Below are positions 706 through 10,312 of a stretch of 64,000 nucleotides of DNA, piece by piece. The notes beneath the pieces were generated by a model. The model worked only from the letters and a program-made list of their open reading frames with translations. It did no database searches and had not been told where the DNA came from. The first letter of the stretch is position 1; every line of letters begins with the position of its first letter. Where the stretch lies: positions 7,626,001 through 7,690,000 of the forward strand of contig OZ059896.1 of the NCBI GenBank assembly GCA_964057225.1. The letters are read 5' to 3'. Position numbers and translations under genes: made by a program. The DNA is from Auanema rhodensis (lineage: Eukaryota > Animalia > Nematoda).

Positions 706-1277
706 TTGGCGCGAAAGCGACGGTTTCTTTTGTTTAAATCTTGATCGTGTCGTTGGTTCAGGGATGTGGGGGATCTTTCTGACAGGTTGCTTTGGGTTCA
801 CTTTCTTATTCCTGCTTGAATATTTATTTGTTTTTCATTAGAAGTGGCTAAAAACATTATTTTCCTTGTGGGTTAATTTTCTATTAAAGATTTCTACATT
901 TTGCAGTGATTGTATTACTGTTGACTCATGTACATATTCTTTGATATAGAAGACAATTGATCAGAGGACTCCCGAGTGGTGGATAAATTCATTAGATTAA
1001 CAAGCGTTTTTCGCGCATAGGTAGTTTACCTTTTTATCTTTTTGAGTGACGCCTTATCTTATTGACGATTGGAGCTGCAACTACTACGGAAACGCACTCA
1101 TGGCAATAGAACTGCAGCTGTTAAATATTTTCATTATTTGTTTCATATAATTTCACTTCATTTTCAACAATTAATCCCCGACCTCTTGCTGTGAGTATGT
1201 AAATGATCACATCTGCGGCTAGCGCAGAAAATCTACTTCATCTAAGTTCGGTGCGGCTGTTGCCGTTTTGGCGCCAA
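706..1277. promoter_or_regulatory. Three E2F/DP consensus sites upstream of the Myb-C-like gene
   Basis: TTGGCGCGAAA at 706-716, TTTCGCGC at 1009-1016 and TTTTGGCGCCAA at 1266-1277 all fit TTTSSCGC. Confidence 0.6.
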
Positions 1278-1632
1278 TATCGTAGAGAGGATCGATCGAT
1301 GAATACGGTTGTGAGGGGGGTTGGTATTTTAGCTGTGTGAGGCAGACAGGCTGCGTAAGCACATGGGCAAGGTCAAGCAGTGAGGAAGAGATGGTTGGCT
1401 TGGTTGACCCCTACTGCACAGCACAGTCTCCACCTTCTTTTCATGCATATTTGTGTGTTAACCCACAACTGTTTTGGCTGCATATGCCGTGCTTGTTTCC
1501 AGCTTATTTCATTATTATACAATATACTTTCTTAAAATGCTAGAATATTTCATAATATATAATTATATCCTTTTTTAAACATAAAATCATCAAACTTGTT
1601 AAAAATGCTAAAGAATTTTTGTTTTAAGCTCT

Positions 1633-3425
1633 ATGTGGGAAGGACCCTCCTGGCTCGTAGCTGAACGTGAAGCTAATCAAGCTCTTCAGGAAGCAAGTCC
1701 ACCCAATAAGTGGCCTAGAGTTACTACACCTCCAAGCAGACGACAGTCGCTGCTTAGTAATATTGACGACTCCGGAATAGGTTTATCATTTTGTAGCCCA
1801 CCAATTTCTCAAAAGGTTTGTTGACAGTTTTTTATAAAATTGTAGTGTGGTGTAAAAAATGAAACAAGATATCGAATTTTAGGGAGCCGTCAGGACCTCC
1901 CCGCTTAGAACTCCTAAAACTCGTACAATTGTGCACATGAGTACAACACCTTCACCTTTCCGGTTAGTATCTATTATTAATAATGCGCATGTTTCAAATT
2001 TCAAAGTTTTAGGTCTTTTCGGTTGTCGTCATTTTCTTCGCCAACTTTATCAGGCCGCGTTTTAAAATTATCCAATACGAATAATGTTCTTGGTTGGTCA
2101 TGAAGCTTTATTAAAATTGCAAATAATTTTATTATTCAGGTGTCAAATTTTGTGAAAATTCGATGGATAAATCCCATGGGCAAGTAGACTTAACTGGCCT
2201 TGCATCTCCCAGCGCTGCTAGGTAACGTATTCTTTTATTTATTCATTTAATTTGTTTTCTTTAGAACTCTTCAACTTCCCACAACTAGTGAAGACATAAA
2301 TTCAAATACATCGATGCAAATGGAGCCTCCTGAAACGCCCAGTAAATGTCTTTCGGTATAAATTTTTTTTTAATGGAAACTTATTTTTAATTTAAGCTGG
2401 AAGAGTCCGGACTATTCGAAGATAGCTATCCTCTTATATCAACATCAACTCCTCTTAAGAGTCTTTCATTCGAAACGAATAGGGTCCCACTTCCTGGTTG
2501 TGATATATCGTGCGTTATTAAAAAAATATTTCTCAGTAGTATCACTTATTCTGATTCAGATTGATCTCGGATCCTTCGTTTCCTTACAGCGATGCTGATC
2601 CCCAATCTCCTACTACGCCTTCTTCCTTCAAAAAGGTGATGATAGACGTGGAAAGAAAAGGAAGCCTTCGGCCATGTCAGCTTATGGTAAGTTTTCTTTT
2701 AATTTTATCTGAAGATTATTTAATATTTTCTTATTATTTTTAATTTTTATAATGCTAGCTTTTTAACTATCGTTGTTTCTCTCTCAATTTGCTTCAAATG
2801 CCTTTAACACTTTTCTAAAATCTTTCTTTTTTACTTCTATGTTTCTCTTAAAAAAAAAAAGGTAGCATTAAGTAGCTGATAAGATTCCTACTGTAATGGC
2901 AGTGTGAAATTTTATTCGGTTACCATTTTGAAGTACCGCTACCTTTTCCCGATAACGTGCTTTATCAGCTCACAAGTTTATTCTGTGCTTGAGAAAGCTT
3001 CAAAGTTTTAATTCGAGTGACCATATGAATGATACTTTTGATCATTCTTTTTTTTATTCTAGGGATGAGCAAAATAATCAGTCTTAGAAAACATTTCAAT
3101 CTTTTTCCAATACTGAAAATGTCTTGAATATAAAAGTATATATTTCAGGAAAGAGATGAAGGCCCTCCAATCAAAAAACCAAATATCGACACAAGTGAGG
3201 TTTTCCGCTCCCCAAAGAAACCAATAAAGCCCGTAAGTTTCTGTTTCCTGTTCTCATGTCTATTTTCTGATACAAGGACATGCATACCGTTGTGTTCTGA
3301 TACCCTTTACTAATTTTTTTCAGTATTCGCGAAAGTGGTTGCGTATCGTAACAGGCGATACTAAAGCCCAAAGAGACATTACGCTATCAGCCAAAGCTTT
3401 CTTAAGTGAGATGGTTAACTCATAA
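1633..3425 (+). CDS. ~314-aa Ser/Thr-Pro-rich protein with Myb C-terminal motifs (Cmyb_C-like and MuvB-binding-like) and no Myb DNA-binding repeats; 9 exons
   Basis: Open frame through 9 GT-AG-bounded exons (1633-1815, 1883-1962, 2013-~2092, 2140-2222, 2265-~2355, 2397-~2509, 2560-2687, 3149-3232, 3324-3425). Motifs ISTSTPL, PTTPSSFKKVMIDVERKGSLR, EGPPIKK and terminal YSRKWLRIVTGDTKAQRDITLSAKAFL. The gene model is well supported; the Myb relationship is motif-based inference. Confidence 0.7.
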
Positions 3426-3781: not shown

Positions 3782-6700
3782 ATGATCGCTCATAAAAGCT
3801 CTGTTTTTTATGTTTTTCTTTTCCTGTTCAACGTAAGTGCTTTAAATAATTATTTTAGAGTTCTAGTGTCTTATCTAAATCAGTTTGGGTGGCCCAAAAA
3901 AGAGAAGATAATATTTAATTTCTCTTGTCTGCATTTAATATTCAAAGTAAAAGGTGTCCTTATTTTATTATAGGTTTTTTTTAAATATCTGGTGTTTCGT
4001 TAAGTGTCATTTCCATGTGATAAACGCCTCAATTCACTTGGATTGGTTTTAAGCTTTTACCTAATATACGGCAGTTCTTGAAAATTCATTACTTTTATGC
4101 GACGTATTACTAGAGCTGAGGTTATGCTACGTTGAATGTGAGACTTGCTTCATTTCAATCTTGAAGTTTCCTGTTTGATCCTTTCAACCAAACACTGGTG
4201 GTGAAAAGTTTGTAACATTTTTTGCTAGTTCAAGATTTTAGAAAAATTCAATCATTTAATCGACCAATTAGCAGACCAGACACTTTTTCATACATCTCAA
4301 CCAGATTTGTGAGGGCAAATTAAAAAAAAATCAATTAATCGTCTGTAAATGGATAATCCTATTAGAAGTAGACGGCAAGAGCGTTATTCGATTAAAGCTG
4401 ATAGGGGCTGTGTTGCCGTACTTCACAAGCACATTGCCAGGTCTGCAGAACGACACATTGACACTTCGGCTTAGTTAAAAAGCTGTTTCCTTTTTTTGGC
4501 AGAATTTAAAGGACCATGCCCCTCCCCTTCTTTGTCATTTAGTTTTTCAATTCATCATTTTCGTTCATTGTGCCAGCTGCTGATATATCTATATTTCGTT
4601 AATCATGTTCACTTTTCATTTTTTTCGCTTTTTACTATCACTTTTATATTTTGATGGGAGGAGTTGAATTAGGACATAGGGGGTATTGCTATGGTGTGAA
4701 TTGGTTTTCAGAGACCGGAGAGATCGTATTTCCGAGATAAGCCCATCTATGCCATGTGGACAAAATTTTGTGAAGCAGGTGTTTCCCTGTTTTTTTGCCC
4801 CCCTTTTTCAGGATAATTCATGGGAGAAGAATAGGGAAGAATTAAGTTTGGCATTGCGGTATTGCTTTAAGATATAATTTCCAAAAATGTGTCACTTCTG
4901 AGATGAGAATTGTGATTTCAATACCATTGAACATTTCTTTTTTCATGTAATATATATGTTTATATACAATTGAAAACTATTCAAAAGGGTTCTATCATTT
5001 GTTAAAAGTGTACGAACTCTTTTCTGAGGCAAACATTAGACTTTCAACTTCTGGTTTCTATTTGACAAGTTTAAGAATGATTGTAAAACCTTGAGGAAAC
5101 ATTAGAAATTTTTGTTTCCATAGAACGTTGAAATTCTTTTGTCCGCTTCTTTCATTTTTCATTTTCTATCTTTGTGTCTATGAAAATTAATATTTCTATT
5201 CCGAATGAATAGTTAAGCAACTTACATGTTTCTATAGCAACATAATGATAGAAAGCTATGTCAGATAACGACTAGTTCCATTTTAACAACATTTTTTATT
5301 GGAATTTTACATTTAAAATAAAGATAATTAGAAATCAAATGCTAAGTGTCACATGTATGTTTTGATTTTCATTATGCATTAAGAATTTTACTGCATATGA
5401 TAACAAAATTTGCTTTCATTCTAGTCTTCTATATAGCTTTCAATCTATATCTTTACTTGTAGGCAATTATGGCGTTAAACGAGTGGGATAAAGGTTTTAC
5501 TCAAATAAGAGCTTTAGTTGGTAACGATGTTCCAGACGAACGAATTAAAAACGTTATGCGAAAGTTTGCACATGTAAGTCTGATATTTCTTTTTTTCTTC
5601 TTGTGTAATTAAAAGAAGAAATATCGAACCGTCTTAATTCATGCGTTATACTCTAATTCTTTCAGTCTAATGAAGGTATATTAACTTCTGATGAGTGTAA
5701 TCAATTGCATTCAAAAGTACTTCAACCACTTAAGGAGATGAAAATCGCTTTGTTAGTTGTGGACTTTCAAAATGATTTCGTATCTGGATCTCTGAGCATT
5801 AAGGTTAGATCAAAGGATACATGAAAGAATTAGATTATGTACCACCTGTCTACATTACTCAGTTTTCTCTTTTAGAGTGGTGATTCTGGAGATGATCCAA
5901 TAGATGCCTTACCTCCTTTGAATAATCTCATTCAAAGTCCTAATCTTGATCAAGTAGTTTATACAATGGTAAGTTTATCTATAGATATACACGTTGTTTA
6001 TTTTTCCAAGTTAGTTTTTTCAATAAAAGACAATATATTTCAAGATCTGGAACTAGATATTTAAAGTGCGATCCTTTTGATATTCTCTTGTTCCTTTCAG
6101 GATTGGCATCCTCCAAACCATATATCTTTCTATGAACATGCTCGTAATTCGGATCGCGTCTTATCGCCTGACGATAAAATCAGAAAACTGAGGCCATTTG
6201 ACATTGTTAGGTTTGAAAAACCTAATACAGTGCAGGTTAGTACCTTTAAAATTTTGGTTGTTTAACTAATTTAATTTGAAATTGGCTTTATTAATTCAGT
6301 TAATAAACATATATTTAACATGAATTAAGTATGTATAAATACGTCGATAAAGGTCTTATGCAAAATAACATAAAAAATGAATAAAATCATCTCAAAAGAA
6401 ACACCGACATTTCTTTCACTTAGTTGACTTTATAAACCATATTTTGTTTGTCTATATACAACTCATTAAAGGAAAATAATATCTTAATGAATGACACATA
6501 GGTTGTAAATCTATTTTGTTGACAACAATGCCACCCTTTCTAGTCGTTGTCTCTTCGTATAATACAATACATGGTATCTCTAACTAACCTTTATGTTGCA
6601 ACTGATCTATATATCCTTGGAATGATACTAGTATTACAGTACAAATAAAGAATAATCCAATCCGAAATATAATAATTTTTGAATAAAAAAAGATTTTTCA

Positions 6701-7250
6701 GATTCTCTATCCAGCACATTGCGTTCAAGGATCATGGGGTGCACAACTTCATTCTCAAATGATATTAGCTCCTGATGCTAAATATGTACGAAAAGGAACT
6801 GATGTGTTTGTTGATAGTTATTCAGCTTTTAAGGAAAATGATGGAGCTAAAAGGTTTCTAGTATACACTTTAAATCACAGTATTAATGCTTGAAAGAGTT
6901 TTAGAACGGAATTAGACTCTGTACTGAAAAACGAAGGCATCACTGCGGTACTAGCTTGTGGTTTGGCTTATGATATATGTGTAATGCATACTTTAAAAGA
7001 TGCAGCTCAATTTGGATATTTATCCGCAATTATAACAGATTGCAGGTAAAATTTTCTTAAATTTCAAATTTCAAACATTATTTCTATTTATTTCAGCAAA
7101 GGATTATCTAAAGAAAAGAAACAAGAAGCCGATGATCTCTTTAATAACAGAAAAATAGCAATAGTTAATGAAACCCAAGCTACCGAAATTATTGATCGTC
7201 ATATCGTTCCAATGGAATGGGTTGAGTATTTGACTGCACGAATCAAGTAG
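3782..7250 (+). CDS. pnc-1: Nicotinamidase (isochorismatase family, PNC-1/PNC-2-like); signal-peptide exon 3782-3832 and internal ATG at 5469
   Basis: Motifs ALLVVDFQNDFVSGSL, DWHPPNHISF, LYPAHCVQGSWGAQLH, RKGTDVFVDSYSAF and CGLAYDICV; stop TAG at 7248-7250. Assignment to pnc-1 versus pnc-2 is not resolved. Confidence 0.92.

Positions 7251-8281: not shown

Positions 8282-10312
<2,031 letters not shown>

What the first reader, a model, noticed from the sequence alone, without database searches (positions are those of the whole stretch)
1633..3425. 'Headless Myb': candidate missing nematode MuvB partner with the Myb C-terminus but no DNA-binding domain
Seen in sequence: the spliced ~314-aa protein carries four motifs in order: ISTSTPL, PTTPSSFKKVMIDVERKGSLR, DEGPPIKK, and a final exon (3324-3425) YSRKWLRIVTGDTKAQRDITLSAKAFL. 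Knowledge, recalled rather than aligned: animal three-repeat Mybs have the same series in the same order, namely LTSTP, PRTPTPFK.AL..E.KYGPLK, ENGPPLLKK (c-Myb) and the MuvB-binding domain (B-Myb approximately MSSAWKTVACGGTRDQLFMQEKARQLL). The last exon reproduces the spacing W..[VI]..G.T..Q......A[RK]..L of that domain, which binds LIN9/LIN52. C. elegans is described as keeping MuvB/DRM and its Myb-binding surface while having lost Myb. No W-x19-W Myb repeats are visible between rpl-12 and the ATG, and the ATG follows a trans-splice-like TTTTAAG. Inference: this may be a truncated Myb descendant that still docks on MuvB as an activator, adaptor or competitor. That would explain why the binding surface is conserved in nematodes.
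Basis: partly seen in the sequence, partly recalled or inferred. Interest (0 to 1): 0.92.

Follow-up and report, generated by a model that had tools for sequence, protein, structure and literature searches.

The report
Nematode Myb tail without DNA-binding head
This nematode gene encodes a mostly disordered protein that ends in the same short MuvB-docking module as animal Myb oncoproteins but has no Myb DNA-binding domain, making it a concrete candidate for the Myb-like partner that nematodes were thought to have lost.

Summary
A 9-exon, 313-aa gene (window 1633-3425, + strand) is confirmed by an annotated Auanema protein that is 89% identical.

- **Family:** orthologs occur in nematode clades III and V, with a partial clade IV model. 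The last ~40 residues are one of the two best conserved blocks.
- **C-terminal match to Myb:** a profile of 18 nematode C-termini searched against all PDB sequences finds exactly one chain, the human B-Myb MuvB-binding peptide of 6C48 (E = 3e-4). A family profile searched against 5.8 billion proteins finds one non-nematode hit, a Myb C-terminal fragment carrying Pfam Cmyb_C.
- **Second motif:** the PTTPSSFKK...ERKG "hinge" motif also matches that Myb fragment, in the same order.
- **No DNA-binding domain:** there are no Myb repeats upstream, and cDNA contigs of two orthologs carry in-frame stops just before the ATG.
- **Structure and promoter:** AlphaFold2 predicts disorder except for a confident two-helix C-terminus. 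Three of the window's four E2F consensus sites lie in the 5' flank.
- **Not supported:** the ISTSTPL and DEGPPIKK resemblances. The conserved N-terminal two-thirds is not detectably Myb-like.
- **Untested:** binding to LIN-9/LIN-52, and orthology to C. elegans TCL-2.

This scan had not reported the finding on other DNA.

The parts
709..1274 (.). Promoter region with three E2F consensus sites (TTTSSCGC at 709-716 on the minus strand, 1009-1016 and 1267-1274 on the plus strand)
   Evidence: only 4 matches in the whole 64 kb window, and 3 of them lie in this 566-bp stretch 5' of the gene.
1622..1632 (+). Trans-splice-like acceptor TTTTAAG followed by CTCT directly before the ATG
   Evidence: The strongylid ortholog cDNA contig L002 has GTTTGAG (the 3' end of SL1) and an in-frame TAG just upstream of its ATG.
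1633..1815 (+). Exon 1 (aa 1-61), with the conserved WP..TTP motif (1711-1731) and the invariant DSG (1768-1776, a possible phosphodegron)
   Evidence: W27, P28, T32, P33, D46, S47 and G48 are invariant in 18 orthologs.
1883..1962 (+). Exon 2, with the LRTP and TPSPFRSF CDK-type sites
2013..2092 (+). Exon 3 (FSSP, LKLSN conserved block)
2140..2221 (+). Exon 4
2265..2355 (+). Exon 5, with the conserved ETPSK site (2329-2346)
2397..2509 (+). Exon 6, with STSTPLK (2439-2459); S-T-P fits the Polo-box docking consensus
   Evidence: (TSTPL invariant in A1). The consensus is quoted in PMC4362466.
2560..2686 (+). Exon 7, with the Myb-type hinge motif SPTTPSSFKKVMIDVERKGSLRP (2606-2674)
   Evidence: 10/18 identical to PRTPTPFKKALAEMERKG of the Myb fragment L001, E=0.002. 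(15.0 bits versus at most 8.9 in 5000 shuffles).
3149..3232 (+). Exon 8, with the basic patch DEGPPIKK (species-specific; a K/R-rich patch in orthologs, possibly an NLS) and the conserved F..P.K.IKP lead-in to the C-terminal domain
   Evidence: F1 and P4 invariant.
3324..3425 (+). Exon 9, the MuvB-binding-domain-like module YSRKWLRIVTGDTKAQRDITLSAKAFLS (3324-3407) plus the stop codon
   Evidence: only PDB hit is B-Myb 6c48_F. (hhalign probability 97.8%, P=1e-12). (pLDDT 78-94 with two helices, in the ortholog P0001).

Best explanation
The gene encodes a DNA-binding-domain-less relative of animal Myb. It is a mostly disordered, CDK-site-rich protein of about 313 aa. It probably belongs to the nematode family whose Haemonchus member is named TCL-2.

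Shown here:
- The gene model is correct.
- The family is conserved across chromadorean nematodes.
- The C-terminal two-helix module is homologous to the Myb MuvB-binding domain (MBD). The Trp and Gln that are critical in Drosophila Myb (W607, Q618) are invariant, with the same 11-residue spacing.
- A collinear Myb hinge motif is present in clade V species.
- There is no Myb DNA-binding domain.
- The 5' flank is rich in E2F sites.

Inferred:
- The C-terminal module docks in the conserved LIN-9/LIN-52 pocket of MuvB, as the B-Myb MBD does in PDB 6C48.
- The protein is expressed under E2F control. It is probably regulated by CDK phosphorylation (14 S/T-P sites), Polo docking at S-T-P, and a DSG degron.
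- Once bound, it either converts MuvB towards activation of cell-cycle genes or competes with DREAM assembly. There is a precedent: the DBD-less C-terminus of Drosophila Myb is necessary and sufficient for Myb function.
For: Gene model and orthologs.

MBD homology:
- Nematode profile A2 (7 sequences) against 177,635 PDB sequences finds only 6c48_F 'Myb-related protein B', E=0.011.
- Profile A4 (18 sequences) again finds only 6c48_F, E=3e-4, 23.5 bits, covering peptide residues 2-30.
- The family profile searched against 5.8e9 proteins finds one non-nematode hit, P0039, which carries Pfam Cmyb_C at E=5.9e-15.
- BLASTP of Toxocara P0017 against that Myb fragment gives 14/24 identities, E=3e-8.
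- hhalign of A3 against L001 gives E=6e-6.
- hhalign of A4 against a 3-sequence Myb MBD alignment gives probability 97.8%, P=1e-12.
- The Toxocara MBD is 13/29 identical to human B-Myb, more than two bona fide Myb MBDs are to each other (9/29).

Hinge: E=0.002, collinear with the MBD hit; beats all 5000 shuffles.

Headless:
- No Myb repeats upstream.
- No Myb_DNA-binding Pfam hit in 10 orthologs.
- In-frame stops upstream of the ATG in cDNA contigs L002 and L003, plus an SL1-like GTTTGAG in L002.
- rpl-12 lies directly upstream in Auanema, Pristionchus and Heterorhabditis.

Structure: AlphaFold2 gives pLDDT below 55 everywhere except residues 271-316 (78-94), with helices 286-292 and 297-313.

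E2F sites.

Literature:
- Nematodes lack an animal-type Myb yet keep the LIN-9/LIN-52 Myb-binding pocket, which still binds Drosophila Myb. K606/W607 and D617/Q618 are critical. The Myb C-terminus alone suffices in flies (PMC7225089).
- As of 2025 no B-Myb ortholog had been described in C. elegans (bioRxiv 10.1101/2025.08.04.668394).
Against: - No binding data or complex model could be produced here.
- Pfam Cmyb_C does not hit any nematode member at E<=10.
- A single-sequence search with exon 9 finds nothing in PDB.
- The N-terminal two-thirds, which is as conserved as the C-terminus, shows no similarity to the Myb fragment. Descent of the whole gene from Myb is therefore not shown.
- The hinge motif is clear only in clade V.
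- The Asp equivalent to Drosophila D617 is not conserved; it is Ala in the window.
- L001 and L005 were found with nematode-derived queries, so only B-Myb is a fully independent reference.
- No Caenorhabditis ortholog was recovered.
Confidence: 0.7

Rival explanations
1. The protein is primarily a Bora/SPAT-1-like mitotic kinase cofactor. Its conserved N-terminal S/T-P array would activate Aurora A and PLK-1, and the C-terminal helices would serve another role or be an added module. MuvB docking would not be its main function.
For: Two orthologs carry the UniRef auto-name 'Protein aurora borealis'. The N-terminal block is as conserved as the C-terminus. It holds many S/T-P sites and an S-T-P Polo-docking-like site roughly where SPAT-1 has S251. 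By eye, G.FRF..SIEK loosely resembles the Bora FRWSIDQ motif; this is recalled, not aligned.
Against: Pfam BORA_N gives no hit at E<=10 on 10 members, including the two so named. Auto-names across orthologs are mutually inconsistent (Bora, MAKR6, bHLH, PDZ, E3 ligase, TCL-2), and most are 'uncharacterized'. No conserved FF...P-S-P element like Bora M2/M3 is evident in A3. This rival does not explain the significant and specific Myb MBD match.
Confidence: 0.13
2. The C-terminal similarity to the Myb MBD is convergent or fortuitous. On this view it is a nematode-specific amphipathic helix pair that binds an unrelated partner, and the protein (TCL-2-like) acts in Wnt and cell-polarity pathways with no MuvB link.
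For: The matching segments are short (about 29 and 18 residues). Pfam Cmyb_C is silent. The Haemonchus ortholog carries the name TCL-2, and the title of Zhao et al. 2003 (cited in PMC5153639) links tcl-2 to Wnt signalling.
Against: B-Myb is the only PDB hit, at E=3e-4. A Myb fragment is the only non-nematode hit in 5.8e9 proteins. Two independent motifs match in the same order and at the same C-terminal position. The functionally critical Trp and Gln are conserved with identical spacing.
Confidence: 0.1
3. The gene model is a fragment. A full three-repeat Myb exists whose DNA-binding exons lie further upstream or were missed.
For: Gene models of disordered proteins are often incomplete. One ortholog (P0002) is mis-fused to rpl-12.
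Against: rpl-12 ends about 1.3 kb upstream on the same strand, and there is no Myb-like ORF in between. Two RNA-seq contigs have in-frame stops before the ATG. Independent annotations in many species start at the same Met.
Confidence: 0.02

Closest known systems
Animal three-repeat Myb proteins (human B-Myb/MYBL2, Drosophila Myb): C-terminal hinge and MuvB-binding domain (PDB 6C48 chain F)
   Same: Both have a C-terminal module of about 30 residues at the extreme end of the protein, with the pattern S..W..[IV]..G.T..Q..[MLI]...A..[FL]L. The Trp and Gln that are critical in fly Myb are present with the same spacing. AlphaFold2 predicts two helices; I recall, but did not verify here, that the B-Myb MBD in 6C48 also forms two helices. 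The preceding P.TP..FK..[ML]..[VM]ERKG hinge motif is also shared in clade V species. Both have E2F sites in the promoter; for B-myb, E2F regulation is established knowledge, recalled here.
   Different: The nematode protein has no R1-R2-R3 DNA-binding domain and no Pfam Cmyb_C hit. Its N-terminal two-thirds is a different conserved S/T-P motif array. The Asp before the critical Gln is not conserved. The hinge is degenerate in clade III species.
C. elegans TCL-2 (Zhao, Sawa & Herman 2003)
   Same: The Haemonchus ortholog CDJ97475.1 is named 'Protein TCL-2'. The window gene sits directly upstream of a nicotinamidase gene. From memory, C. elegans tcl-2 (Y38C1AA.4) neighbours pnc-1 (Y38C1AA.3).
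   Different: The C. elegans sequence could not be retrieved, so orthology and the presence of the C-terminal module in TCL-2 are unverified. TCL-2 is described as a novel protein acting with Wnt pathways, not with MuvB.
Bora / SPAT-1
   Same: Both are disordered cell-cycle proteins rich in CDK sites with a Polo-docking-type site. Two orthologs are auto-named 'Protein aurora borealis'.
   Different: There is no BORA_N Pfam match and no evident Tpx2-like M1/M2 or P-S-P M3 elements. Bora is not known to carry a Myb-type C-terminus.

Membership tests
Animal-type Myb (3R-Myb) | N-terminal DNA-binding domain of three Myb repeats | tested here: not met
   No Myb_DNA-binding Pfam hit in 10 orthologs at E<=10. 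No repeat pattern upstream of the ATG. cDNA contigs have in-frame stops before the ATG.
Animal-type Myb (3R-Myb) | Central proline-rich hinge with the P-R-T-P-T-P-F-K type motif | tested here: met
   The window and P0001 motif matches the Myb fragment L001 at 10/18 identities, E=0.002. The clade V profile scores 15.0 bits versus at most 8.9 in 5000 shuffles. The motif is not evident in clade III orthologs.
Animal-type Myb (3R-Myb) | C-terminal MuvB-binding domain | tested here: met
   B-Myb 6c48_F is the only PDB hit, E=3e-4. hhalign against Myb MBDs gives probability 97.8%. BLASTP gives E=3e-8.
Animal-type Myb (3R-Myb) | Residues required for MuvB binding (Drosophila K606, W607, D617, Q618) | tested here: inconclusive
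   W and Q are invariant in 18 orthologs with 11-residue spacing. K is present in the window (RKW) but variable elsewhere. The D position is Ala in the window and variable elsewhere.
Animal-type Myb (3R-Myb) | Match to Pfam Cmyb_C (PF09316) | tested here: not met
   No hit at E<=10 on exon pieces or on 10 full-length orthologs.
Animal-type Myb (3R-Myb) | Physical binding to the LIN9-LIN52 coiled coil | not testable with these tools
   No multimer prediction or biochemistry is available here. The single-chain AlphaFold2 model shows a confident two-helix C-terminus.
Bora / SPAT-1 | Match to the Bora N-terminal domain (Pfam BORA_N) | tested here: not met
   No hit at E<=10 on 10 members, including the two auto-named 'aurora borealis'.
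Bora / SPAT-1 | Tpx2-like motifs M1 and M2 (FF) followed by the P-pS-P motif M3 (PMC7997955) | tested here: inconclusive
   Tested by inspection of A3 only. No conserved FF...PSP element is seen. No Bora sequence was available for alignment (one search found none in PDB).
TCL-2 (C. elegans) | Orthology to C. elegans TCL-2 by sequence and synteny | not testable with these tools
   The only evidence is the name on the Haemonchus ortholog and a conserved rpl-12 - gene - nicotinamidase order in Auanema and Pristionchus. No Caenorhabditis sequence was retrieved.

The most novel reading that the evidence does not exclude
Nematodes never fully lost Myb. They kept a DNA-binding-domain-less Myb C-terminus (the TCL-2 family) that docks on LIN-9/LIN-52. 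This would be the 'other protein' postulated by Vorster et al. 2020 to explain the conserved Myb-binding pocket, and possibly the missing activator of G2/M genes in C. elegans.
Probability: 0.5. Interest if true: 0.92.

Novelty: new variant of a known kind. Interest (0 to 1): 0.86.

Why it matters
The literature held here states that all sequenced nematodes lack an animal-type Myb. It also states that their LIN-9/LIN-52 Myb-binding pocket is conserved and still binds fly Myb (PMC7225089). How G2/M genes are activated in C. elegans is described as unknown, because no B-Myb or FoxM1 ortholog has been described (bioRxiv 10.1101/2025.08.04.668394).

A conserved nematode protein with a statistically supported Myb MuvB-binding module makes that open question directly testable with peptides, mutants and existing worm genetics. 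If the C. elegans member is TCL-2, it would also reinterpret a 20-year-old 'novel protein' mutant. Finally, it would be a natural example of what fly genetics showed artificially, that the Myb C-terminus can function without the DNA-binding domain.

Tried and rejected
- Pfam on the nine exon peptides and on 10 full-length orthologs gave no relevant family, neither Cmyb_C, Myb_DNA-binding nor BORA_N.
- phmmer with exon 9 alone against PDB gave nothing. Only the profiles detect B-Myb.
- The N-terminal profile A6 gave no hits against PDB.
- DEGPPIKK is not conserved in orthologs.
- The W-x19-W spacing inside exon 1 is not conserved in orthologs and is rejected as a Myb-repeat relic.
- Foldseek against PDB gave no matches. 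VIA wide gave only generic helical hairpins with Z below 3. Both are uninformative for a 45-residue module.
- The first metagenome scan, using the hinge pattern, found nothing. The second found two further MBD-like exons of unknown origin.
- The third protein search, with the 19-sequence profile, hit the candidate cap and added nothing. It returned no Caenorhabditis, Bora or Myb.
- Paper searches for tcl-2 and for Y38C1AA gene names were unproductive. Guiley 2018 and Zhao 2003 are not held.
- The full spliced protein of the window could not be submitted to the tools because it has no contiguous reference. The 89%-identical P0001 was used in its place.

Full report
**Gene and observation**

Window 1633-3425 (+ strand) holds a 9-exon gene with canonical GT-AG introns that encodes 313 aa.

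A search of 1.84 billion representative proteins with exon 1 returned a 316-aa protein, P0001, from Auanema sp. JU1783. It aligns end to end with my model at 280/316 identity, so the model is essentially correct and the window comes from a close Auanema relative.

The 3' end of rpl-12 lies at about 77-330. No three-tryptophan Myb-repeat pattern occurs in any frame between it and the ATG. The ATG is preceded by TTTTAAG|CTCT.

**Family**

Profile searches of 5.8 billion proteins recovered orthologs in these groups:
- Strongylids: Haemonchus, Ancylostoma, Dictyocaulus, Cylicocyclus and others.
- Pristionchus and Heterorhabditis.
- Ascarids: Toxocara and Anisakis.
- Oxyurids: Enterobius and Syphacia.
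- Filariae.
- A partial Acrobeloides model.

No Caenorhabditis sequence was recovered.

Names attached to these proteins are mostly 'uncharacterized'. Where present they are inconsistent: 'Protein TCL-2' (Haemonchus CDJ97475.1), 'Protein aurora borealis' (two entries), MAKR6, bHLH, PDZ and E3 ligase.

Conservation is bipartite:
- An N-terminal array of short motifs: WP..TP, an invariant DSG, SPP, LRTP, TPSP.RSF, SSP, LRLSN, ETPSK and TSTPL.
- The last ~40 residues, with the pattern F..P.K..KP.S..W..I..G.T..Q..MT..A..FL.

**Test of the Myb claim**

Single-sequence and Pfam searches see nothing. Profiles do.

*PDB search.* A 7-sequence C-terminal profile searched against all 177,635 distinct PDB sequences gave exactly one hit at E<=10, 6c48_F 'Myb-related protein B'. 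This is the MuvB-binding peptide crystallised with LIN9-LIN52 (E=0.011). With 18 sequences from three nematode clades the same sole hit improved to E=3e-4, 23.5 bits, covering peptide residues 2-30.

*Large-database search.* The only non-nematode hit of the family profile in the 5.8-billion-protein search was P0039. P0039 is a fragment from a JGI contig, L001, and carries Pfam Cmyb_C at E=5.9e-15. Its ORF is open to the 5' end of the contig, so its N-terminus is not visible.

*Pairwise and profile comparisons against L001:*

| Comparison | Result |
|---|---|
| BLASTP, Toxocara P0017, MBD region | 14/24 identical, E=3e-8 |
| BLASTP, Auanema P0001, hinge motif | best HSP, E=0.002 |
| BLASTP, Auanema P0001, MBD | second-best HSP, E=0.012, collinear with the hinge |
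| hhalign, family alignment A3 | E=6e-6 |
| hmmsearch, C-terminal profile A4 | 27.5 bits versus at most 9.9 in 5000 shuffles |
| hmmsearch, clade V hinge profile | 15.0 bits versus at most 8.9 in 5000 shuffles |

A second metagenome scan added one more clear MBD-like exon, L005. hhalign of the nematode C-terminal profile against B-Myb + L001 + L005 gives probability 97.8%, P=1e-12 over all 29 columns. L001 and L005 were found with nematode-derived queries, so B-Myb is the only fully independent reference.

Ungapped, the Toxocara module is 13/29 identical to human B-Myb. That is more than B-Myb shares with the L001 Myb (9/29). The nematode modules therefore lie within the divergence range of real Myb MBDs.

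Vorster et al. identify K606/W607 and D617/Q618 of fly Myb as critical for MuvB binding. The Trp and Gln are invariant in 18 nematode sequences with the same 11-residue spacing. The Lys is present in the window, and the Asp is not.

**Headless**

- None of 10 full-length orthologs has a Myb DNA-binding Pfam hit.
- Two RNA-seq-derived contigs of orthologs have in-frame stop codons just 5' of the ATG. One of them also has GTTTGAG, the 3' end of SL1, next to an adapter remnant.
- rpl-12 is the immediate upstream neighbour in Auanema and Pristionchus, and is mis-fused to the gene in a Heterorhabditis model.
- The order rpl-12 - this gene - nicotinamidase is conserved between Auanema and Pristionchus.

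**Structure and regulation**

AlphaFold2 with the family alignment predicts disorder throughout (pLDDT below 55). The exception is residues 271-316 (pLDDT 78-94), with helices at 286-292 and 297-313, which is the MBD-like module. Fold searches on this tiny module are uninformative.

Three of the four TTTSSCGC E2F consensus matches in the 64-kb window lie at 709-1274, in the 5' flank. About 0.05 would be expected there by chance, which suggests cell-cycle-regulated transcription.

The protein has 14 S/T-P sites, a conserved S-T-P that fits the Polo-docking consensus quoted, and an invariant DSG.

**What is not supported**

- The ISTSTPL and DEGPPIKK resemblances were not shown to be significant. 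DEGPPIKK is not conserved in orthologs.
- The N-terminal profile has no similarity to the Myb fragment or to any PDB chain.
- Whole-gene descent from Myb is therefore plausible but not shown. A fusion of a Myb C-terminal cassette to another disordered regulator cannot be excluded.
- The Bora alternative rests on two automatic names. BORA_N does not match, and the defining Bora elements described in PMC7997955 are not evident. It could not be tested by alignment, because no Bora sequence was obtainable.

**Mechanism proposed**

I propose that the C-terminal two-helix module docks in the LIN-9/LIN-52 pocket of MuvB. This is inferred, at about 70%.

The disordered body would carry CDK, Polo and degron regulation and possibly effector functions. 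The protein would either switch MuvB towards activation or antagonise DREAM; the direction is unknown.

There is precedent. The animal-specific C-terminus of fly Myb is necessary and sufficient for viability, chromatin association and G2/M gene activation.

**Novelty**

In the held literature, nematodes are described as lacking Myb and Myb-type MuvB-binding domains. As of 2025 no B-Myb ortholog had been described in C. elegans. No paper linking TCL-2 or this family to MuvB was found.

I class this as a new variant of a known kind: a natural Myb-family protein without a DNA-binding domain.

The link to C. elegans TCL-2 rests on one database name and on my recollection that tcl-2 neighbours pnc-1. 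It needs checking.

Noticed in passing
window 1651-1713 (exon 1): Exon 1 contains W-x19-W (WLVAEREANQALQEASPPNKW), the spacing of a Myb repeat. The spacing is not kept in strongylid orthologs, so it is probably coincidence.
   Followed up: partly
window 5690-7046 (+) and 8681-10178 (-): A nicotinamidase (isochorismatase-family, pnc-1-like) gene lies directly downstream, tail-to-tail with a NAMPT gene (Pfam NAMPT_N and NAPRTase hits). The order rpl-12 - this gene - nicotinamidase is conserved in Pristionchus fissidentatus (L004).
   Followed up: partly
L001 1-1425: A JGI contig (sample 3300012469) encodes 474 aa of a Myb C-terminal region (Cmyb_C) from an unknown animal. Its MBD is closer to ascarid nematode modules (14/24) than to human B-Myb. 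The ORF runs off the 5' end, so it is unknown whether this protein has a DNA-binding domain.
   Followed up: partly
L005 322-417; L006 781-849: Two further metagenome contigs carry MBD-like sequence (GWERVACGRTTTQLELIHQARDFV in L005; LQLGWEKVAC in L006). Their organisms and gene context are unknown.
   Followed up: no
P0002 (Heterorhabditis), P0021 (Toxocara), P0036 (Thelazia): Several public gene models of this family are mis-fused to neighbours (rpl-12 and a tyrosinase domain) or truncated. Automatic names for orthologs disagree with one another.
   Followed up: partly
A3/A7 alignment, clade III orthologs: A motif PEQ.NGPLESS.C is strongly conserved in ascarid, oxyurid and filarial orthologs and in Pristionchus, but is absent from the Auanema and strongylid proteins. 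Its function is unknown.
   Followed up: no
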